From NCBI RefSeq assembly GCF_006345805.1, contig NC_043003.1:104594001-104658000 (forward strand): 64,000 nt of DNA. Reading direction: 5' to 3'. Source of the stretch: Octopus sinensis (Eukaryota). The notes under the pieces are model-generated. The model was given only the letters and a program-made list of their open reading frames with translations. It was not told where the DNA came from and did no database searches. The position numbers and the translations under genes were made by a program. Numbering within the stretch: position 1 is the stretch's first letter; each line of letters starts with the position of its first letter. Shown here piece after piece: positions 9,082 to 46,094 of this stretch.

Positions 9082-9372
9082 GTCAGTTTACATTTGAAGT
9101 CAACAGTTCCAGCTTGTTAGTTGGCTTTCTATTTCCCTTCTCTCCTTTCCTCAATGAAGATTGCATACTAAGAGACTTTGATATTAAGTTTCAGAGCTCT
9201 CAAAATTGGTTTTGTTGTTCAAATTCTTCACTTCCTGTCATTTTATGATTTTGTACATATTTGATATTCAGCTATATAAATAGGTCAGAGTCTAACCCAT
9301 GGCAGCATGGATATTAAATGATGATGATGATGATGATGATATATATACATATAATAATAATAATAATAATAT

Positions 9373-9590
9373 TAGGGAGTATAACTCCAAACTTACAGGG
9401 AAAAATTTAATTTAGTATTAAATCAAATTTCACACTATATAAATATAAAATATGAATTAGAGATAAATAAAAATATATATATTATATTAATTATATATAT
9501 TATTTGTTATTTATGTATTGGTTTATGTCTATCACTATTTGAGTTGCTTAATAGTGGTTTTATCTCTAATTCTTATTTTATATATATTAA
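9373..9590 (+). mobile_element. Internally deleted copy of the AT-rich fold-back element
   Basis: Same start (tagggagtataactccaaacttac) as 13237, followed by a short left arm and an ~85-bp right arm that is inverted relative to the left. Confidence 0.75.
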
Positions 9591-11158
9591 TATTTTATTT
9601 GGTCTTTGCCTGTTGTAGAGCTGAATATACATATGCTTCTGTATGAAGTGTTAGTCAGGTACAGAGTGGTAGTAAGCAATTGAGATGGCAAAGGAATAAA
9701 TAATCATCCTATGATCCTCAGGCACTTAACTATGAGTCCATTGTATCTTAGAGCAGAAACAGCTGTAGACAAATAAAGTTCATAAGATAATTGTTTATTC
9801 CTTCCTCACTCACACTTCCTCTATTTCCACCAATCTTTCTATACCTTCTGCCATACTTCATTTTTAACACCTCTATCTTCTATCATTCTCAATACCCTTT
9901 CATATCTAACATCACACCCCACTTACTATAACTCTACTACCCACTACTCTTATATCTTGCACATCATTCTGCTACTTTCTGATCTTTTCTCTTTCCTGAG
10001 CGACTCCTATATCTCTCTCCTTACCCCTAACTGGACCTCCACCCTTGTTCATTATTGCTCCGTTTACCGCCAACACTAACCATCTATTACTATCCCCTCA
10101 CACTTTTATGAAACTTTCCCCACTCCACATCCGCTAATCCACCATCTGCATCTTCTCTTATACCCACCATCTCTATCTTCTTTCTAAATACTCCCACCCA
10201 CTCTTATATAATGCAGGGTATTCTTGTATCTCCTCTTGACCAGAACACCTGGGCTTGTCTTCTGTCATTCTTTATTGCCTTACCATTTCCAAGTAGTAAT
10301 ATTTCCCCATGGCTAGTACAACAATGACACTCGCTTACAACAATCATGCAACACTCCCACACATATGTATATTCAACAGGCTTCTTTCAGTTTCCATTTA
10401 CCAAATCCACTCACATGGCTTTCATTGGTCTGGGGCTATAATAAGCACCTGCCCAAGGTGCCACTCAGCAGAACTGAAGCCACAACCAAGCTTCTTACCA
10501 ATCTAATCTCAGTTAATTTTTGCTGTATTTCTAAATACTAGATATATAAACATTGTAAGGTGAACGTTTTACGTCTAATGAATTAACAGTAATATTATAC
10601 TAGTGTATTTTAGTGCGATATGAGATAGCAGGATGGTGGATGACACATTTGGTAGAAAATCAGACAAAAAGATTTATAGCATTTAGTTAGATCTTGAGTT
10701 TTAATTCCAACTGGTTTTGAGTTCTCTTTCAGCCAGTCAGGGTCAATAAGGAGTTAAATCAGTCAATAATACCTTTACTTTTGTATGCTGATGTAGTTTA
10801 AAATTCAAATGTACAGTTTGTGTGTTTGACATCAATCCAACAAGGGAACATGTTTTTATATGTATCTAAATATTCTCCATCAAACTGACTGGTAACAATG
10901 CTTATTTGTATAAAATATTGTTCTGACAGGGAACATGCAGTGTTTGTGTAATGTATTGCTCCACATGAAAGCAACAGGGAATGTATCTGTGTAATATATT
11001 GTCTTGCACCAAACTGACAATGACCAGTGATCGTGTAACATTAAACCAACAGAGTGTGTTGTTTATAATATATCACTCTAATTTAAAGCGACAGGAAACA
11101 TTTTAATTTCTTTTGTTTCCACAGACTACTTTCATGTTTTTTTTCCTTCAATTCTAAG

Positions 11159-11235
11159 GTTCTGAAAGCTGCCTTTGGGGAGTTTGCTAGTATCACCAAA
11201 TCTGGATTTAGTGAAGAGGAGATCTCCCGGGCTAA
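11159..11235 (+). CDS. UQCRC2: UQCRC2 exon
   Basis: Acceptor ttctaAG, donor GTaaag, phase 0/2. Encodes VLKAAFGEFASITKSGFSEEEISRAK (cf. [26 protein letters not shown]). Confidence 0.9.
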
Positions 11236-11270
11236 GTAAAGACATTTTTTTACCTTTTTATATTATAACC

Positions 11271-11356
11271 GTATGACTATTTTACGATCTATATACCACA
11301 GTGGCTAACTAATATCTTAAAATTTACGTACGTTTAATAATTATATACTAATAATT
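11271..11356 (+). repeat. Internal (loop) fragment of the same AT-rich element
   Basis: Near-identical to 13848-13929 (3 substitutions and 1 indel by eye). Confidence 0.8.
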
Positions 11357-11706
11357 ATATTATGGTTTAACTAACTTTAACCTGATTTGGCATTGCAGCT
11401 GTTTGCTCTGTCATACAATGTTTGGTTGTGTAAGTGAGGTAGTCAAGATATTTAGAATCTTCCTGGATGTCCCACTGTTTTAATATGGTTGTGTTAAGGA
11501 TGCAATCCTGGGATGTAGCTTCAAAAGAAAATCTGTTGTATTCTGGCTGCTACATTGAGCGGGTCACGTAAGAAGTGTCATGCAGTGGTTGAGTATTTAG
11601 TTGATTTGTTGCTGAGACTAGCAAGGTAGAGTGAAAGAAGGTAGAATGTTAGTTTTGCCTACAAGAGAACTTTATAACATTGGTTGAATGTTTACTTTCT
11701 ATACAG

Positions 11707-11860
11707 GAACCAGCTGAAGGCAGCTGTGTTGATGAATGCTGAAGACAGCAACCTTGTTCTGAAAGAGATGGCTGAGCAGTTACTGATTGCTGGAGGACTG
11801 GCTGACATCACAGACATCTTGGCACAAATTGATGCTATCACCATTAGTGATGTCAACACG
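11707..11860 (+). CDS. UQCRC2: UQCRC2 exon
   Basis: Acceptor ctatacAG, donor GTcagt, phase 2/0. Encodes NQLKAAVLMNAEDSNLVLKEMAEQLLIAGGLADITDILAQIDAITISDVNT (cf. NKLKAGYLMSVES..IDSVANADII). Confidence 0.93.
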
Positions 11861-12450
11861 GTCAGTGGTTCTCTTTTTATTTATTTTTGTCTCTCAGAAG
11901 CAAGAACTGTTTATTGAATTTGATCCTTATACTTTTCTAACCTCAAAAACTCGCCCTAACTACCATTTTAAGTTGGTTGCTTATAATCCTGGTGGCAAAA
12001 ACATTAAACATGTCTTTTATGTTACTTCAAAAGTTTTCCATAGATAATACTTTATCCTCTTAAATAACTCAATGGTTTATATCGCAACAACAACACTAAT
12101 CTAAACCAGCAAACATTGTAGTTACAAGAGAGGGCTTCAATGAGCCAATAAGAAAAAAGGGGCTAAAACTACTAAAGGGTACCCTGTAACACTATATTCT
12201 GGCATATGTAATTAAACTGAGAGGAAAGGAACTTATCAAAGAATCTTCCCTGTAAATAACATGAAGATAAATGTATTAAGAGATGTTAAAATGATTAGTT
12301 GATTGGATAATATAGCAATGCTAAGGCCTCAGAGTGAGTCAATGACTAAGTTTTGATTTTTCACTCTGGTTGCTAATACCTTTGGGAAGTGTATGAAAAT
12401 TAAAACTATTTTGCTCCTCATTCATGTTCACATTTTGTTTCTATCTCCAG

Positions 12451-12540
12451 GTTTCAAAGAAGATCATTAATGGCAAACCTTCGATGGCTGCTGTTGGCAA
12501 CCTCTCACAAACTCCTTACTTGGATGAACTCTACAAATAA
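12451..12540 (+). CDS. UQCRC2: UQCRC2 terminal coding exon
   Basis: Acceptor ctatctccAG. Encodes VSKKIINGKPSMAAVGNLSQTPYLDELYK* (cf. [26 protein letters not shown]). Confidence 0.95.
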   Translation, partial: VSKKIINGKPSMAAVGNLSQTPYLDELYK

Positions 12541-12565
12541 CTATCGTCCATCTTAGTCCTGTAAA

Positions 12566-12707
12566 AATAAAAATCCCTGTTAGAAGTCACCACTAAAGAT
12601 TACTGCAATTATGTTTGGCCAACACATTTCAAGAGATGCCAGTTATTAGTTGTCGCTATCTAATTTACTCTGGTTATTGACTCTGCAGTCTAAAACTGGA
12701 AAATAAA
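12566..12707 (+). terminator. UQCRC2 candidate poly(A) signals
   Basis: AATAAA at 12566-12571 and 12702-12707; the second is followed by a GT-rich tract at about 12721. Confidence 0.55.
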
Positions 12708-13236
12708 AACTTTAAAATATTGTGTGTGTGTCCTTTGTTGTTTAAGCTGACCTCACTGTTAAAGCTTTGTTGGTTTGCTGGGCAAAAAATGGGAGATGAA
12801 GTTGCTTAGCTCCAGATCAGGAGTCTTCCTTTTCAGTGTATCTGTTGATGGATCTCCGTTGTTTGATGAGGATTACCTGCTCCGGAATTATTGTGAATGC
12901 GTATTCTATAGATACATGTACCTATTTCTTTACTACCCACAAGAGGCTAAACACAGAGAGGACAGACAAACGGATTAGGTCGATTACATCGATCCCAGTG
13001 CACATACAAGATCAAACATTTCATTCATTCAAGGTAGCATGTAAAAGCACCCACTACACTCTTGGAGTGGCTGGTATTAGGAAGGGCATCCAACTGTAGA
13101 AACTTTGCCAGATCAGATTGGAGCCTGGTACAGCCTCTGGCTCACCAGTCCTCGGTCAAACTGTCCACTTCATGCCAGCATGGAAAGCAGATGTTAAATG
13201 ATAACAATGATATATATATATATATAATAGTAATAT

Positions 13237-14188
13237 TAGGGAGTATAACTCCAAACTTACATGGAAAAATTCAATTTAGTATTAAATCAAATTTCACAGT
13301 ATAAATATATAAAATATGAATTGGAGATGAAACCTCTATTGTGCAACTCAGTGATAGACATGGACCAATACATGAATGACAAATTATATATGTTTTTGTA
13401 AAACATATAACTTATAACTGGATCTCAAGAGGTGTAGGATGAATGATCAATGTATAGTATAATAAGTAAAAACACTACGTACGTTTTATGGCAACAATTA
13501 AATTTAAATTTAATTGAAATAAATTCGATTTAAAATTATAGTCAGTCTTCAGGTTAATGATAATAGTTAAATAAATAAGCAAATAGAGTTAAACATTATT
13601 TAAGAATTAAATAAAATAATTTTTCTTATAGAAAAAAACTCCATTAACTAAAAGTTTCTAAATTATAATCAACAAATATAGTAATTAAAGATCTAAAATT
13701 TTCTCTATCAATAAATATATAGACATATAACCAAAAATAAATAAATTAGTCCATTATTACTTAAATAAATATTATAAATATCTATAGAATATATTTATGA
13801 AATACAATTTAAAAATTAAAAATGTATAACCTATCTTCAAAAAAAATGTATGACTATTTACGATCTATATACCACAGTGACTAACTAATATCTTAAAATT
13901 TACGTACATTTAATAATTGTATACTAATAATTGATGACATATCTAAATTCAAATTAACAATCAATAGTTATATAGAATACAATAAAATTTCTTAAATAAA
14001 AAAAGTTTACTTAACTCTCGAAAACCATAGTGTTTTTGCTTATTGTATTGATCATTCATTTTGTACTTTTTGAGATCTAGTTGTGGGTTGAATGTTTCGT
14101 AAAGGTATTTGTTATTTGTGTGTTGGTTTATGTCTGTCACTGAGTTGCATAGTGGTGGTTTTGTCTCTGATTTATATTTTATATATAT
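13237..14188 (+). mobile_element. AT-rich element with ~190-bp imperfect inverted arms, class unknown
   Basis: Left arm at about 13305-13480 is the reverse complement of the right arm at about 14025-14188; there is a ~65-bp unpaired 5' extension and a ~540-bp AT-rich loop. Confidence 0.8.
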
Positions 14189-14409
14189 AAGCTTAGCTGT
14201 CACTCACTCGTGAGTATCTTGGTATCCGTGCTTTCACTAGTTATTTTAGATGTCTTTGTAGTAGTTTTGAACAGGCATATACCCTGTATTAGCCCTCACA
14301 TTGTTGACCCAGAGAAGTGTGACAAATTAGGAGGGAAAGAGAGGGTGGTGGTGGCTGGTTCTCATTTTCAGCTGAGGAAACTGGAACAGTATGAAATGAG
14401 GGCCTTGCT

Positions 14410-14710
14410 GGCATGGGCTGGACAGTTTGACTGAGGACTAGCAAGCCAGGAGGCTGTGCCAGGCTCCAATCTGATCTGGCAAGATTTCTACAGCTGGATG
14501 CCCTTTCTAATGCCAACCACTCGGAGAGTATAGTGGGTGCTTTTTACGTGCCACCAGCACAGGAGCCAGAGGGGGCTGGCATCGACCACGTTCAGATAGT
14601 GCTTTTTATGTGCCAACGGCACAGGAGCCAGTTGGGATGAGGGGGCTGTCATCAACCACGTTTGGATGGTGCTTTTTACATGCCACCGGCATGGGGAGCC
14701 AGTTGGTGGT
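14410..14710 (-). mobile_element. RTE 3'-UTR-derived SINE-like element with 3 hairpin units
   Basis: Reverse copy of ggcattaggaagggcatccagctgtagaaa..., plus gtgccaccggcac repeats. Confidence 0.75.
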
Positions 14711-16476: not shown

Positions 16477-18675
16477 GTGAGGACCAAAGACTTGAAGTAT
16501 GTTGTGTTGCAAGACAGTGTGTGAGAGAGAATCGTGATGTGGTAGGAGAGAAATGTGTCCGTATGGATGATGGTTCACTTGCACTAAATGAGGCTGCAAT
16601 GAGAGAGGTTTGGAGACACCACTATGAAAGGTTGCTCAATAAAGAGAATGAATGGGAGAAAGAGAGTCTGCTGAATGCCAACCCAACAGAGGGACCAGCC
16701 ATCCGAATTGACAGTACCTTGGTAGTTAAAGCAATCAAGAGTATGAAGGCAGGGAAAGCCCCCCGCCCCATCAGGAGTCACTGCAGAGATGCTCAAAATA
16801 TCTGGCAGTGTCGGCTATAGCCTAGTCACCCATATAGTTAACCAGGTGATACACGAAGGAGTCATACCCAATGACTGGTGTAGCAGCACCATAGTCAACT
16901 GCTATAAAGGTAAAGGTGACGCTTTAGATACAAATAATTACAGAGGTATCAAGTAATGAAGGTCACGGAAAGGGTCATAGCCCAACTAATTAGAGAGAGA
17001 GTCAGTTTAGATGAGATGCAGTTTGGGTTTGTGCCAGGGAAAAGCACCACTATATTCCTGGTAAGACAGCTGCAGGAGAAATACCTAGCCAAAGATACAC
17101 CTCTGTACCTGGCTTTCGTTGATATGGAGAAAGCCTTCGACAGGTCCCCCGATCCCTTATCTGGTTGTCAATGAGGAAACTAGGGATAGATGAATGGTTA
17201 GTGAGAGCTGTGCGAGCCATGTACAGGGACGCTGCTAGTAAGGTGAAGGTTGGCAACGAGTAGACTGAAGAATTCAAGGTAGAGGTTGGGGTCCACCAAG
17301 GTTCAGACCTCAGCCCCCTCCTATTTATCATAGTCCTCCTGGCAATAACAGAGGAATTCAAGATAAGATGCCCCTGGGAGCTCCTCTATGCTGATGACCT
17401 TGCTCTAATTGCTGAGTCGCTATCAGAACTGGAGGAGAAGTTTCAGGTGTGGAAACAAGGATTAGAATCGAAGGGCCTTAGAGTCAACCTAGCCAAAACC
17501 AAAGTCCTAATAAGTAGGAAGGTAGACAAATCACAAACGCCTTCAGGTAGATGGCCCTGCTCGATCTGTAGAAAAGGCATAGGTAGAAACTCTATAAGGT
17601 ATACCAAGTGTAAGCTATAGACTCATAAGAGGTGCAGCAATGTCAAAGGAAGGCTAACTAGGAAGATGGTTTGTGTATGTGGCAGATGCTCAGGAACAAT
17701 AAACACTGAAAATGCTCTGAGACTTTCCAGGGAGAAAAACTAGAAATAGTTGATAGCTTCCGTTACCTAGGTGACCAAGTCAGCAGCGGGGGCGGGTGTG
17801 CTAAAAGTGTAACTGCTAGAGTAAGAATAGCTTGGGCAAAGTTCAGAGAGCTCTTACCTCTGCTGGTGACAAAAGGCCTCTCGCTCAGAGTAAAAGGCAG
17901 ATTGTATGACGCATGTGTACGAACAGCCATGCTACATGGCAGTGAAACATGGGCCGTGACTGCTGAGGATATGTGTTAGCTCGCAAGAAATGAAGCTAGT
18001 ATGCTCCGATGGATGTGTAATGTCAGTGTTCATACCCGACAGTGTAAGTGCCTTGAGAGAAAAGTTGGACCTAAGATGCATCAGATGTGGTGTGCAAGAG
18101 AGACGTATGCGCTGGTATGGTCATGTGACGAGAATGGATGAAGATAGTTGTGTGGAAAAGTGCCACACCCTAGCAGTTGAGGGAACCTGTGGAAGAGGTA
18201 GACCCAGGAAAACATGGGATGAGGTAGTGAAGCACGATTTTCGAACATTAGGTCTCACCGAGGCAATGACTAGTGACCGAGACCTTTGGAAGTATGTTGT
18301 GCGTGAGAAGACCCAGCAGGACAAGTGAGACCATAACCCCTGGCCTCTACCTGGGATGTAGCCAGTCCACTAATGCATACCTTTCCTTCTTGGGACACAA
18401 AACTCCACTTGCGAAGACCTGTTGAGGCAAGTGAAATCGAAATTGATAAAAAAAATCAATGGAAATTGCAGTTGTGATACCAGTGCCGGTGGCACGTAAA
18501 AATCACCCATACACTCACAGAGTGGTTGGCGTTAGGAAGGGCATCCAGCTGTAGAAACACTGCCAGATCAAGACTGGAGCCTGGTGCAGCCTCCTGGCTT
18601 CCCAGACCCCAGTCTAACCGTCCAACCCATGCTAGCATGGAAAATGGATGTTAAACGATGATGATGATGATGATG
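16477..18675 (+). mobile_element. 5'-truncated RTE LINE, subfamily B, with (GAT)n tail
   Basis: Runs from EDQRLEV..RENRDVVGEKC through RT (DMEKAFD, YADDL) to GRGRPRKTW..QDK*, then the 3' UTR and the gatgatgat tail. Confidence 0.92.
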
Positions 18676-36344: not shown

Positions 36345-36359
36345 TTATGTATGTGTGTG

Positions 36360-36404
<45 letters not shown>

Positions 36405-36465
36405 ATATATACATACACATATATATGCAAATATATATATATATATACATAAACATATATGCATA

Positions 36466-36496
<31 letters not shown>

Positions 36497-36730
36497 TCAT
36501 ATACATACATATATATATATGGATACCTATATATATATATATATATATAGATAGATAGATAGATAGATATAGATACCTATACATACATATATACAATATA
36601 TATATACATATATACATACCTATACATACATATACCTATACATACATATACCTATACATACATATGTGTGTATATATATATATATATATACATATACATA
36701 TGTATATATACATATATACATATACATATG

Positions 36731-36768
<38 letters not shown>

Positions 36769-36830
36769 CATACACATATATACATACGTACACACACATA
36801 TATATAGATATATATACATATAAATTTAAA
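36345..36830. repeat. Compound (TA)/(TACA)/(TAGA) microsatellite
   Basis: About 490 bp of low complexity; it explains the IY-rich ORFs. Confidence 0.97.
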
Positions 36831-36849
36831 TTGATTAAGTATCACTAAC

Positions 36850-43049: not shown

Positions 43050-43581
43050 CTGGAAATGAAAAACAGGAGAAAACAAAGGAGGAAATTAGTAAACTGAATG
43101 TTATTGGAATACTTAATTTTATAAGGGGTAGTGTATGTCACAGAGTCAAGAGTACTGTCCCTAGCACTACTCCTACTTTAAATGACAGAGAACTGCACTG
43201 GGATAGATGTATGTGAAGTGAAAAAGTACCATGCTCCCCTATACTGGTAGATGGAGTGTGCCACCCTTGCTGCAATAGAGAGCTTCACAAATATGTATCC
43301 TGTATAATAATCTTCATCATCATCATCCAGTGTTTGAAATCCAGGTTTTGTCCCCATTAACGGAGGTGACCAGATCGACCTCAATGCCTATGGCAACTGC
43401 TCTCACATCATCTTGCCAGGTTTCAGGCATCCTCCTTTTTCAAACCAACCCTCCCAATCTCCTCCCCCACCTGTCCCTTCCACCTTTTCCTCAATCTACC
43501 TTGCTTTCATGCTCCATTTACCTCAACCATAATCATCCTCATCAGAACATGTTCTTCATCCCTCCTCAACACATGCCCATA

Positions 43582-46094
43582 CCTATTTCTTTACTACCCA
43601 CAAGGGGCTAAACACAGAGGGGACAAACAAGGATAGACACACGGATTAAGTCGATTATATCAACCCCAGTGCGTAACTGGTACTTATTTAATCGACCCCG
43701 AAAGGATGAAAGGCAAAGTCGACCTCGATGGAATTTGAACTCAGAACGTAGCGGCAGATGAAATTCCACTAAGCATTTCGCCCGGCATGCTAACGTTTCT
43801 GCCAGCTCACCGCCTATACCATCTCACTCCATTTGCCCTTGCCAACCATTCCACCTTCGAATTTTAATCTTTGCAGTTTCAAAATAGATAAATATTGACA
43901 GGTGAAAAAAAAAAGGAGGTGGGTTGTTAACATTCGGAGGTGCAATGTGACAGAAAACCATAACAGATATTTCTTTATTGCCCACAAGGGGCTAAACATA
44001 GACGGGACAGACAAGGACAGACAAAAGGATTAAGTCAATTACATCAACCCCAGTACGTAACTGGTATTTATTTAATCGACCCCGAAAGGATGAAAGGTAA
44101 AGTCGACCGTGGCAGAATCTGAACTCAGAATGTAGCGGCAGACGAAATACCGCTAAGCATTTTGCCCGGCACACTAAAGTTTCTGCCAGCTCACCGCCTT
44201 AAAACCATAACAGAATTGAGATGGTTGACTGGTTAAAGAATTGAATTAACTACTTGTGACTCTGAAGTTGAAATCTGCTACTATCACTTTAGCGTTTCTA
44301 GGCCAAAACTGTAATACTGGGATAAAATTGGGGTAAAAATGATTTTTAAAAAATACCCATATTCTAAAAGACCTGTAACTTAGTTTTCACTTTCCAGCTT
44401 CCCTAACTTACCGGAGCAAGGGATGCTAAGTGAGTAACTAATGGTAAATGGATATGAAGGCAATAATGGAAGGCTTGGAGGAGAGGTAAGTGTATTCTAA
44501 GGCTGGAAAGAAATGAAGAGAGCATGTTTCAATGAATGTTTATGTAGTGTTATAGTGAATGAGCAAAGTACAAATGACCTAAAAAAGAACCAATTTATAT
44601 TACTGTTGTGTAGTTGAGATAAATGCAACAAAAGGACAAGAGAAGTAAGTATGCATGGGATCACAAAGACATCTTTATTGAGTTAATGGAGCAAGGAAAG
44701 CTGGGTGGTAGTCAACGGTAAATAACGATATAAGTAGCAATGGAATATTTCAAGGTGAGGCAAATGTAAAAGATCACAAACCAATGTTTCAAATAGGGAT
44801 TTTCATCAAGGAAATTTCTGGAACATTGGTATGGTGGAAAAGGTAGCTAAGTCATGGTGAGAGGAAGGGGCAGTGGTTGATAAAATATTCTATGGTGGTT
44901 ACCAGGCAAGCTTTTAGGCCAGATAATGAATATCTGATTTTTTTTTTTCTTTGCAAGTTAAATTGATTTCCTTATCTCTTCTCTCTCCCTCTCTCTCTCT
45001 CTCACCTTCCCTAAACTCTATCATCATATATACATACATCAAAACTGACACACACATTCTCTATAGCAACATGAAGAAAAGTAAACACCTATTTCTTTAC
45101 TACCCACAAGGGGCTAAACACAGAGAGGACAATCAAGGACAGACAAACGGATTAAGTCGATTATATCGACCCCAGTGCATAACTGGTACTTAATTTATTG
45201 ACCCCGAAAGGCAAAATCGACCTCGGCGGAATTTGAACTCAGAACGTAATGGCAGACGAAATACGGCTATGCATTTCGCCTGGCGTGCTAACGTTTCTAC
45301 CAGCTTGCCGCCTTTAGAAAAGTACATACCATTCTGAGAATCTGTGTTAGTAGGTGCAATAATATAGCTATACAAACAGCATTTTCTCAGGCATTTCAAT
45401 CAAGCAACTTCAAAATGTTAATTATATTTTCAAACTGAATAAACAGATAGTATCTTACCATCATATAAAACCATACAAGTCTGTGGAGGGCTGGTATCTA
45501 TTTCATCAAAGTAGGGTGCAGGTGGCTGAATAGTTAGGAAGCAACTTACAACTACATATTTTGCTAAAGCACACCTATCAACACCTTCTTCTCAACTTGT
45601 TTCAAGTTTCCCTCCCCTGTTAAAAATCCCTTACCTTCCTAAAATTATGTCTAATCCCACATATATATCTTAAAACTTACCATGCACCCTTCATTATCCT
45701 AGTGTGCACTCCTAACTGCCCCAGTTACCATGCACCCTCCTTACCTCAACTACCATGCATTCCTAGCTGCTCCAGTTACCATGGACCCTAAATTACCTCA
45801 GGTACCATGCACCCCTAGCTGGCCCAGCTACTATGGACATTGAATAATGTTACTCTGTATATATACCTATTTCTTTACTACCCACAAGGGGCTACACACA
45901 GAGAGGACAAACAAGGACAAACGGATTAAGTTGATTATATCGACCCCAGTGCGTAACTGGTACTTATTTAATCGACCCCGAGAGGATGAAAGGCAAAGTC
46001 GACCGTGGCAGAATTTGAACTCAGAACGTAACGGCAGATGAAATACGGCTAAGCATTTCGTCCGGCGTGCTAACGTTTCTGCCAGCTCACCACC
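43582..46094 (-). mobile_element. Four young ~230-bp SINEs (43582-43814, 43968-44200, 45090-45316, 45866-46094); a fifth copy lies at 59675-59905
   Basis: Near-identical bodies with B box gttcaaatt; TSDs aaaaccataacaga (43954/44201) and gaaaagta(a/c)a(c/t)acc (45076/45317). Confidence 0.9.
45676..45836. repeat. Degenerate ~51-bp minisatellite (about 3 units, each with two taccatgcac sub-repeats)
   Basis: ttaccatgcaccct..ctagctgc.ccag is repeated. Confidence 0.75.

What the first reader, a model, noticed from the sequence alone, without database searches (positions are those of the whole stretch)
13305..14188. Fold-back element with an ADAR-like A-to-G hyperediting signature fixed in genomic DNA
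SEEN: in the outer 80 bp, left arm vs reverse complement of right arm gives 16 differences. Fifteen are transitions and all 15 have the same polarity (G.U-pairable on +). Using the sister copy at 9503-9590 as reference, 14 resolve as A-to-G on the + strand in both arms: left 13323, 13329, 13341, 13362, 13363, 13374, 13378; right 14118, 14122, 14136, 14152, 14154, 14163, 14169. Their 5' neighbours are T (12) or A (2), never C or G. The inner arms add about 15 more same-polarity transitions against 1 opposite (e.g. 13429-13438 and 14083-14090). The unpaired 5' extension (vs 9373-9440) and the loop (vs 11271-11356) show no such bias. KNOWN: ADARs convert A to I in long dsRNA, I is read as G, the 5' preference is U>A>C>G, and coleoid cephalopods edit extensively. 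INFERENCE: a hyperedited hairpin RNA was copied into the genome, either by retrotransposition in trans (RTE RTs are abundant here) or by in-situ write-back. The edited strand is the UQCRC2 sense strand, ~700 bp past the stop codon, so read-through RNA could fold this hairpin. That would be a route from RNA editing to heritable DNA change.
Basis: partly seen in the sequence, partly recalled or inferred. Interest (0 to 1): 0.9.

Follow-up and report, generated by a model that had tools for sequence, protein, structure and literature searches.

The report
Hairpin repeat with one-strand A-to-G hypermutation
A 0.9-kb hairpin-forming repeat just downstream of an octopus mitochondrial-complex gene has about 30 A-to-G changes, all on one strand and only where its RNA would be double-stranded. 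This is the mark of RNA editing by ADAR seemingly written into DNA, but how it got there, and whether it is really in the animal's DNA, still has to be shown.

Summary
Observation confirmed. The arms 13302-13477 and 14028-14189 pair at 162 positions. Thirty mismatches are G:T (G.U-pairable on the + strand) and none are A:C (p about 1e-9). There are also 5 transversion mismatches and three indels.

No other non-microsatellite inverted pair in the window looks like this. Sixty-five control pairs sum to 684 G:T against 899 A:C, and the SINE pair flanking the hairpin gives 9:8.

A truncated sister copy (9277-9590) polarises the outer arms: 14 A-to-G and 1 C-to-T in the target. The G excess is confined to the arms (G 19%, C 9%), against G 7%, C 11% in the loop. 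The 5' extension shows 0 A-to-G among 28 A (P = 5e-4). The 5' neighbour is T at 21 of 30 changed sites against 35 of 96 unchanged paired A (p = 0.0016), and G at only 1 of 30.

CpG decay, APOBEC-type C-to-T, a Pol-eta spectrum, regional strand bias and G.U-tolerant selection each fail at least one test. An ADAR-type hyperediting footprint of a + strand hairpin RNA is the best reading.

How it became DNA is not shown. I found no target-site duplication or poly(A) tail, and the window holds only two family copies. Orthologous loci and raw reads were out of reach, so RNA-read contamination of the assembly is not excluded. Verdict: partly supported.

The parts
12450..12540 (+). Last coding exon of UQCRC2 (cytochrome b-c1 complex subunit 2), with stop codon TAA at 12538-12540
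   Evidence: Sequence read. The spliced last five exons match PDB UQCRC2 chains, residues 288-453, E = 1.5e-32.
13033..13236 (+). SINE-B copy (13033-13211) with its (ATG)n tail, followed by (AT)n/(AAT)-like simple sequence that abuts the element
   Evidence: Eight to nine copies in the window. Other copies end in (ATG)n only. The target and the sister share the extra (AT)n(AAT)n and what follows.
13237..13301 (+). Unpaired 5' extension of the element (begins TAGGGAGTATAACTCCAAACTTAC)
   Evidence: The 24-mer occurs twice in the window, at 9373 and 13237. It differs from the sister at 4 of 68 positions, with 0 A-to-G among 28 A.
13302..13477 (+). Left arm of the hairpin. 13 inferred A-to-G sites: 13323, 13329, 13341, 13362, 13363, 13374, 13378, 13420, 13429, 13431, 13434, 13437, 13438
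13478..14027 (+). A/T-rich loop (G 6.9%, C 10.7%) with no G excess. It contains an 86-nt piece (13848-13932) that is 95% identical to 11271-11356
14028..14189 (+). Right arm of the hairpin. 16 inferred A-to-G sites: 14038, 14045, 14063, 14083, 14085, 14086, 14090, 14099, 14105, 14118, 14122, 14136, 14152, 14154, 14163, 14169. One C-to-T at 14173
14403..14563 (-). Inverted SINE-B copy. With 13033-13183 it forms an outer potential stem (85.6% identical) that shows no polarity (9 G:T, 8 A:C)
9277..9590 (+). Sister copy in a UQCRC2 intron: the last ~45 nt of SINE-B, its tail, the 5' extension (9373-9440), the first 27 nt of the left arm, 33 nt of A/T filler and the last 84 nt of the right arm. It carries A at the positions that are G in the target
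11265..11365 (+). Insertion of about 100 bp homologous to the loop piece. It is absent from the orthologous contig of another octopod and is flanked by the direct repeat TTATATTAT

Best explanation
The element is a fold-back repeat whose + strand RNA forms a stem of about 160 bp. At some point a + strand transcript of a near-perfect progenitor hairpin was deaminated by an ADAR-type enzyme at roughly a quarter of its base-paired adenosines. That edited sequence, with I read as G, was then converted into DNA by a reverse-transcribing activity and is now in the genome sequence. SHOWN: about 30 A-to-G replacements on one strand only, in both arms, only where the RNA is double-stranded, with a 5' U/A preference, in a burst far above background divergence. 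INFERRED: that ADAR did it, and that an RNA-to-DNA step took place. UNRESOLVED: whether that step was insertion of a retro-copy or RNA-templated conversion of the resident locus. The layout leans slightly towards a local or in-cis event, because the target holds the complete SINE plus hairpin and an unedited, 5'-truncated derivative lies only 3.7 kb away in the same gene.
For: Polarity is 30 G:T against 0 A:C over 162 pairs, p about 1e-9. It is unique among 65 inverted pairs in the window, which sum to 684:899. In a sensitive short-range scan the only other polar case is a (TA)n/(CA)n microsatellite. Direction: the sister copy has A at the 7 right-arm G sites and at 13323, and T opposite the left-arm G sites. 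Confinement to dsRNA: the arms have G 65 / C 31, the loop G 38 / C 59, the 5' extension G 8 / C 9. P(0 A-to-G in the 28 A of the 5' extension) = 5e-4, and P(at most 1 in the loop piece) = 1e-3. Motif: 5' T at 21/30 changed sites against 35/96 unchanged paired A (Fisher p = 0.0016); 5' G 1/30 against 11/96; 3' G 5/30 against 9/96. This matches the published ADAR preference of G depleted upstream and enriched downstream (PMC4365171). Burst: about 24% of paired A changed, while the same two copies differ by about 5% elsewhere. The control SINE spectrum is dominated by G>A and C>T, with A>G the rarest transition (9 against 18 T>C on the + strand), and ts/tv at A/T sites is 1.3, against 30 A>G: 0 T>C: 5 transversions in the arms. 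The + strand RNA folds at -251.8 kcal/mol with 32 G.U in a 160-bp stem, against -202.3 for the - strand. Reverse transcriptase genes are present in the window (RVT_1, E = 1.2e-30). Precedent for the route: A-to-G hyperediting recorded in proviral DNA of RAV-1, ALV and HTLV-2/STLV-3 (review PMC8586724).
Against: No hallmark of retrotransposition was found: no target-site duplication or poly(A) for the target or the sister, and no shared 3' end with the local RTE. Only one outgroup copy exists, and it covers only the outer 84 bp. Most left-arm sites and all inner-arm sites are polarised by inference from pairing. AATAAA signals at 12566 and 12702 precede the hairpin and about ten lie in the loop, so a full-length read-through hairpin RNA from UQCRC2 may be rare. 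The flanking inverted SINE pair, itself a potential ADAR substrate in a long read-through RNA, has only 1 A>G in each copy. The G bases have not been verified in raw genomic reads. No family consensus could be built, because protein-based and DNA-pattern harvests found nothing.
Confidence: 0.55

Rival explanations
1. Assembly artefact. The animal's DNA has A at these sites, and the G bases come from RNA-derived reads (cDNA contamination, or polishing or gap-filling with transcript data) of a hairpin that is heavily edited in RNA.
For: This would reproduce every feature seen: one strand, arms only, the ADAR motif, and a position just downstream of a highly expressed gene on its sense strand. 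No independent read-level evidence could be obtained. Window ORFs that span the G sites are not on record in any public assembly indexed here.
Against: There are no gaps (N) anywhere in the window. The region is unspliced, intergenic and lies behind two poly(A) signals, so RNA coverage should be low. From general knowledge, published octopus assemblies were polished with DNA reads. Consensus polishing would flip only sites edited above 50%, yet the changes are evenly spread, 15 and 15, over the outer and inner stem.
Confidence: 0.15
2. Gradual evolution of a functional RNA hairpin. Purifying selection keeps the stem, tolerates G.U and removes A.C, possibly helped by hard-wiring of edited A into G as described for coleoid coding sites.
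For: The + strand stem is almost uninterrupted. In coleoids, edited adenines tend to be replaced by G (PMC7703385).
Against: Selection can only filter changes; it cannot raise the rate. About 24% of paired A changed, against about 5% total divergence of the same copies elsewhere. If G.U were merely tolerated, C-to-T at G:C pairs should make up about 36% of the G.U-creating changes, but 1 of 15 was seen, p = 0.012. Three indels and five transversion mismatches in the stem were not removed. There is no Rfam match. The region downstream of the stop codon is no better conserved in the other octopod (81%) than the introns are.
Confidence: 0.08
3. A DNA-level, strand-specific mutational process with no RNA intermediate. 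Candidates are error-prone repair synthesis (Pol-eta-like WA-to-WG), deamination in a hairpin extruded from one DNA strand during replication, CpG decay, or APOBEC-type C-to-T on an element of opposite sense.
For: 28 of 30 changed A are preceded by T or A, which is also the Pol-eta WA hotspot. Three sites are palindromic TG/TG steps that could formally derive from CG/CG.
Against: The Pol-eta spectrum holds about as many transversions as transitions at A, whereas here there are 30 A>G against at most 5 transversions of any kind, and the loop and 5' extension are untouched. CpG decay gives TG and CA equally, needs an ancestral C, and the sister has TA at those steps. For isolated sites the partner T is followed by A, not G. 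C-to-T from G:C would imply arms of 36-40% G+C inside an element that is 18-26% elsewhere, and needs two hits per right-arm site. APOBECs prefer single-stranded loops, not stems. There is no regional A>G bias: on the + strand A>G 9 against T>C 18 in SINE copies.
Confidence: 0.1

Closest known systems
A-to-G hypermutated proviruses (RAV-1, avian leukosis virus, HTLV-2/STLV-3)
   Same: ADAR-type hyperediting of a structured or double-stranded viral RNA is copied by reverse transcriptase and recorded as clustered A-to-G in DNA (review PMC8586724, citing Felder 1994, Hajjar and Linial 1995, Ko 2012).
   Different: Those are exogenous retroviruses in somatic or cultured cells with their own RT and integrase. 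Here it is a non-coding host fold-back repeat in a reference genome, with no sign of retroviral structure, and the RNA-to-DNA step is unproven.
Hyper-edited inverted repeats in RNA (Alu pairs in human; massive editing in coleoids)
   Same: A long intramolecular dsRNA from inverted repeats, a large fraction of A edited on one strand, and G depleted 5' of the site (PMC4365171; PMC5625713 for Metazoa).
   Different: There the G is seen only in RNA reads against an A in the genome. Here the G is in the genome sequence itself.
APOBEC3-edited retroelements fixed in vertebrate genomes (G-to-A clusters in IAP, HERV-K and others)
   Same: The footprint of an editing deaminase on a mobile element is preserved as a heritable cluster of one mismatch type (PMC2873906 for IAP).
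   Different: A different enzyme, substrate (single-stranded cDNA) and mismatch type. That footprint is not confined to double-stranded parts.
Replacement of edited adenines by genomic G in coleoids ('hard-wiring')
   Same: The same clade and the same direction, A-to-G at edited positions (PMC7703385).
   Different: That is described for single coding sites over species divergence and is ascribed to selection. This is about 30 clustered non-coding changes that look like one event.
Deaminase-driven reverse-transcriptase (DRT) 'write-back' model of Steele, Lindley and Franklin
   Same: It proposes that A-to-I edited RNA is copied back into the resident DNA locus by a cellular RT activity (PMC11817618, PMC5704389).
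   Different: That is a contested model for somatic hypermutation and cancer signatures. Nothing here shows in-situ conversion rather than insertion of a copy.

Membership tests
ADAR hyperediting footprint | Only A-to-G, all on one strand | tested here: met
   30 G:T against 0 A:C. The sister copy gives the direction A-to-G for 14 of the 15 outer sites.
ADAR hyperediting footprint | Confined to the double-stranded part of the RNA | tested here: met
   Arms G 19% / C 9%, loop G 7% / C 11%. 0 of 28 A changed in the 5' extension, P = 5e-4.
ADAR hyperediting footprint | Neighbour preference: 5' U/A favoured, 5' G depleted, 3' G enriched | tested here: met
   5' T 21/30 against 35/96, p = 0.0016. 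5' G 1/30 against 11/96. 3' G 5/30 against 9/96 goes in the right direction but is not significant.
ADAR hyperediting footprint | Editing observed in RNA and dependent on ADAR | not testable with these tools
   No RNA-seq or genomic reads of this species were reachable.
LINE-mediated retro-copy | Target-site duplication flanking the insert | tested here: not met
   No direct repeat of 7 nt or more at any plausible pair of boundaries. The only match is low-complexity TATATATATAA.
LINE-mediated retro-copy | 3' tail (poly(A) or microsatellite) or a 3' end shared with a partner LINE | tested here: inconclusive
   Both copies end in a short (TA)n. There is no similarity to the RTE 3' end at 18443.
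LINE-mediated retro-copy | 5'-truncated copies of one unit | tested here: inconclusive
   The sister starts inside SINE-B and lacks the inner hairpin. This is compatible with 5' truncation and RT skipping of the stem, but equally with DNA-level duplication and deletion.
LINE-mediated retro-copy | Empty site in an orthologue | not testable with these tools
   The only orthologous contig (L001) stops matching at window 12922, upstream of the element. Its continuation has no counterpart in the window.
Fold-back / MITE DNA transposon | Terminal inverted repeats with a target-site duplication, many dispersed copies | tested here: inconclusive
   Long inverted arms are present, but the shared unit is asymmetric (65-nt leader plus SINE tail). 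No TSD was found. There are only two copies in 64 kb and none in 20 kb of O. vulgaris.
Known structured RNA gene (miRNA precursor, hpRNA and others) | Match to a curated RNA family | tested here: not met
   Rfam 15 at E up to 1 gives only a chance snoRNA hit upstream.

The most novel reading that the evidence does not exclude
The resident hairpin was converted in situ. An ADAR-edited transcript of this very locus served as template for repair of the fragile inverted repeat, so that RNA editing was written back into the germline. The layout does not exclude this: the target keeps the complete SINE plus hairpin, its truncated derivative 3.7 kb away is unedited, and no insertion hallmarks are present.
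Probability: 0.15. Interest if true: 0.95.

Novelty: new variant of a known kind. Interest (0 to 1): 0.62.

Why it matters
If the G bases are real germline DNA, this locus is a concrete, PCR-sized case in which the product of RNA editing became heritable sequence, in the animal group with the most extensive editing. It would add a mutational route to the selection-based 'hard-wiring' described for coleoids. It would also give a test case for the contested idea that edited RNA can be copied back into DNA. The G:T against A:C polarity of inverted repeats would become a simple genome-wide statistic for finding further cases. If the G bases are an artefact, the case is a warning that RNA-derived reads can imprint editing on reference assemblies.

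Tried and rejected
1. I tried to harvest family copies through ORFs translated from the arms. A concatenated six-frame query found no hit. The gene caller behind the collection calls only coding-like ORFs, so non-coding repeats are invisible to it.
2. Exact look-ups of window ORFs that span the G sites, of the last UQCRC2 exon and of two TE ORFs were all not on record.
3. I looked for an orthologous locus. The UQCRC2 C-terminal query found only one Logan contig from another octopod (L001, about 82% identical). It ends its homology at 12922, before the element.
4. DNA pattern scans of the metagenome and prokaryote genome collections with two motifs found 0 matches, as expected.
5. nhmmer of the element against the window found no third copy.
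6. CpG decay, APOBEC-type C-to-T, a Pol-eta spectrum, regional transcription-associated asymmetry and G.U-tolerant selection were considered and set aside, for the reasons given under the rival explanations.
7. I considered subfamily differences between two independent inverted insertions. Diagnostic transitions would fall 50:50 between the two polarities, not 30:0.
8. A palindromic chimeric-read artefact would not give polar transitions, and the sister copy shows the hairpin is natural.
9. ADAR acting on the DNA strand of an R-loop would not be limited to the arms.
10. Literature searches found no description of a germline-fixed hyperedited hairpin. Hajjar and Linial 1995 and Knisbacher and Levanon 2015 are not held.

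Full report
WHAT IS THERE. The window carries the last five coding exons of UQCRC2 on the + strand. The spliced peptide matches residues 288-453 of cytochrome b-c1 complex subunit 2 in the PDB (E = 1.5e-32). The stop codon is TAA at 12538-12540. From 12920 onwards comes a nest of repeats:
- a fragment of one SINE-like repeat (12920-13002);
- a full copy of a second SINE, 'SINE-B' (13033-13211), with its (ATG)n tail and further (AT)n/(AAT) simple sequence up to 13236;
- a 65-nt unpaired leader (13237-13301);
- a hairpin with a left arm at 13302-13477, a 550-nt A/T-rich loop and a right arm at 14028-14189;
- 213 nt of unique sequence;
- a second SINE-B copy in inverted orientation (14403-14563).
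A shortened sister of the unit lies in a UQCRC2 intron at 9277-9590. It holds the last ~45 nt of SINE-B, the same composite tail, the leader, 27 nt of the left arm, A/T filler and 84 nt of the right arm. nhmmer finds no third copy in the window.

CHECK OF THE OBSERVATION. Aligning the left arm to the reverse complement of the right arm gives 162 paired positions: 96 A:T, 31 G:C, 30 G:T and no A:C, plus five transversion-type mismatches and three indels. The outer and inner halves each carry 15 G:T in 81 pairs. ViennaRNA folds the + strand RNA into a 160-bp stem with 32 G.U pairs at -251.8 kcal/mol, against -202.3 for the - strand. The polarity has a two-sided binomial p of about 1e-9.

CONTROLS INSIDE THE WINDOW.
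1. Sixty-five other inverted pairs found by BLAST sum to 684 G:T against 899 A:C. None approaches 30:0, and the SINE-B pair that brackets the hairpin gives 9:8.
2. A more sensitive scan for inverted repeats within 4 kb adds only one other polar object, a compound (TA)n/(CA)n microsatellite at 36346-36833. That is a low-complexity false-positive class.
3. Eight SINE-B copies compared with their consensus give, on the window's + strand, G>A 37, C>T 26, T>C 18 and A>G 9. So there is no regional A-to-G bias. The two copies flanking the hairpin have one A>G each.
4. Per-site rates in that control are 0.088 for C>T|G>A and 0.044 for A>G|T>C, with ts/tv of 1.3 at A/T sites. The arms show 30 A>G, 0 T>C, 1 C>T and 5 transversions.

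DIRECTION AND CONFINEMENT. The sister copy has A at all seven right-arm G sites of the outer stem and at 13323. It has T opposite the remaining left-arm G sites. The one exception, 13318:14173, is a C-to-T in the right arm. The two copies otherwise differ by about 5%: 4 of 68 positions in the leader, and 3 substitutions plus one indel in 84 nt of the right arm. A change at about 24% of paired A is therefore a burst, not ordinary divergence.

The G excess is limited to the arms. The arms hold G 65 / C 31, the loop G 38 / C 59 and the leader G 8 / C 9. At the arm rate, the chance of no A-to-G among the leader's 28 A is 5e-4. The chance of at most one in the 86-nt loop piece that has a reference copy is 1e-3. 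That loop piece may, however, be a later insertion (see the side observations at the end).

The inner arms have no outgroup. If their G:T pairs came from G:C, the arms would have been 36-40% G+C inside an element that is 18-26% elsewhere.

SEQUENCE CONTEXT. Taking the partner base as the ancestral state, the 30 changed A have 5' neighbours T 21, A 7, C 1, G 1. The 96 unchanged paired A have T 35, A 36, C 14, G 11. The T enrichment has Fisher p = 0.0016. 3' G is twice as frequent at changed sites (5/30 against 9/96), which is not significant. This is the published ADAR preference, G depleted upstream and enriched downstream (PMC4365171).

WHAT IT MOST LIKELY IS. The combination points to adenosine deamination of a + strand hairpin RNA: one strand, both arms, only the double-stranded part, a U/A 5' preference, about a quarter of the A, and a single burst. 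The alternatives each fail a test.
- CpG decay yields TG and CA equally and needs an ancestral C. The sister has TA at the three palindromic TG/TG steps, and at isolated sites the partner T is followed by A, not G.
- APOBEC-type C-to-T on an element of opposite sense would hit single-stranded parts, needs two hits per right-arm site and implies implausibly G+C-rich arms.
- A Pol-eta WA spectrum would bring about as many transversions as transitions, and would not spare the loop.
- Selection for a G.U-tolerant stem cannot raise the A-to-G rate about 15-fold. It also predicts that about 36% of G.U-creating changes be C-to-T, whereas 1 of 15 is seen (p = 0.012).
- Two independent inverted insertions from different subfamilies would split their diagnostic transitions evenly between the two polarities.

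WHAT IS NOT SHOWN. The step from edited RNA to DNA rests on the pattern alone.
- I found no target-site duplication and no poly(A) at any plausible pair of boundaries, for the target or the sister.
- The element's 3' end, a short (TA)n, has nothing in common with the 3' end of the local RTE. RT genes are, however, present in the window (RVT_1).
- Other SINE-B copies end in (ATG)n only. The target and the sister share the extended tail plus leader, so one composite unit was duplicated rather than inserted twice into SINE tails.
- The sister starts inside the SINE and lacks the inner hairpin. That fits 5' truncation and stem-skipping by an RT, but equally fits a DNA-level duplication with a deletion.
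- The target holds the more complete unit, and the unedited derivative lies 3.7 kb away in the same orientation. This layout fits a local event at least as well as an insertion from elsewhere.
- Against write-back from a long UQCRC2 read-through RNA: canonical AATAAA signals at 12566 and 12702 precede the hairpin and about ten lie in the loop. The outer SINE-B stem also shows no editing-type changes.
An assembly imprinted by RNA-derived reads would mimic every feature. The window has no gaps, and I know of no octopus assembly polished with RNA, but this stays open.

ATTEMPTS TO BRING IN OTHER SEQUENCES.
- The UQCRC2 C-terminus found one Logan contig of another octopod (L001, SRR11869391). It aligns to window 10855-12922 at 79-84% identity and then diverges. 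Its continuation has no counterpart in the window, so it says nothing about the element.
- Arm-derived ORFs found nothing. Window ORFs are not on record.
- An RTE ORF showed that O. vulgaris GCA_951406725.2 is in the collection, but the 20-kb locus obtained holds no family copy.
- Pattern scans of the metagenome and prokaryote collections were empty.
- Rfam has no match.

COMPARISON WITH WHAT IS KNOWN. ADAR hyperediting recorded in DNA is established for retroviruses (RAV-1, ALV, HTLV-2/STLV-3; review PMC8586724). Deaminase footprints fixed in germline repeats are established for APOBEC3 (for example IAP, PMC2873906). In coleoids, edited adenines tend to be replaced by genomic G, which is ascribed to selection at single coding sites (PMC7703385). 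Copy-back of edited RNA into the resident locus is the contested DRT model (PMC11817618, PMC5704389). In eight full-text searches I found no description of a host fold-back repeat carrying a hyperediting footprint in a reference genome. I therefore rate it a new variant of a known kind, conditional on the G bases being genomic.

VERDICT. My confidence is about 0.55 that this is an ADAR-type footprint genuinely fixed in DNA through an RNA-to-DNA step, with the route unresolved. I give about 0.15 to an RNA-read artefact, about 0.1 to an unknown DNA-level strand-specific process, about 0.08 to selection on a structured RNA, and leave the rest open. The decisive tests are cheap: genomic reads or PCR across 13200-14300, the orthologous site in other Octopus genomes, and a genome-wide family consensus.

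SIDE OBSERVATIONS.
- The ~100-bp segment 11265-11365, 95% identical to loop positions 13848-13932, is absent from L001 and is flanked by TTATATTAT. It is therefore a small mobile insertion.
- Inverted repeat pairs downstream of 14 kb show more A:C than G:T, reflecting G>A exceeding C>T on the + strand.
- The A-to-G changes remove stop codons, which opens an 80-codon ORF across the right arm on the - strand and a 46-codon ORF in the left arm. I see no reason to think these are genes.

Noticed in passing
window 11265-11365 and 13848-13932: A segment of about 100 bp in a UQCRC2 intron is absent from the orthologous contig of another octopod (L001). It is flanked by the direct repeat TTATATTAT, and its core is 95% identical to a piece of the hairpin loop. 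It looks like a small, recently mobile element. If it entered the loop late, it is not a valid 'unedited loop' reference.
   Followed up: partly
window 13033-13183 and 14403-14555: Two SINE-B copies in inverted orientation (85.6% identical) bracket the hairpin and could form a second, outer stem in a long transcript. They show no polarity (9 G:T, 8 A:C) and one A>G each against the SINE consensus.
   Followed up: yes
window 14000-64000 (inverted repeat pairs): Across 65 inverted repeat pairs, A:C mismatches outnumber G:T (899 against 684). In SINE-B copies G>A (37) exceeds C>T (26) on the + strand. This is a regional strand asymmetry of C-to-T decay, opposite in direction to the hairpin's signal. 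It may reflect transcription or replication direction.
   Followed up: no
window 36346-36833: A compound (TA)n/(CA)n microsatellite gives extreme polar scores (for example 9 G:T against 77 A:C) in self-complementary alignments. It is a false-positive class for any genome-wide G:T against A:C screen and should be masked.
   Followed up: partly
window 12922 / L001 2009: Homology between the window and the orthologous contig of another octopod stops exactly where the repeat nest begins (12920-12923). The 785 nt that follow in L001 have no counterpart anywhere in the 64-kb window.
   Followed up: partly
window 43579-46087; L003 16585-17923: A SINE-related unit of about 184-190 bp occurs as several copies in the window and as a head-to-tail array in the O. 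vulgaris locus L003, at 89-94% identity. This is satellite-like amplification of a SINE fragment. A piece of the same repeat sits at 12920-13002.
   Followed up: no
window 13961-14203 (-) and 13261-13401 (+): The A-to-G changes remove TAA/TAG/TGA codons, so unusually long ORFs (80 and 46 codons) run through the otherwise A/T-rich arms. The unedited sister has stops in every frame. This is a by-product, not evidence of a gene.
   Followed up: partly
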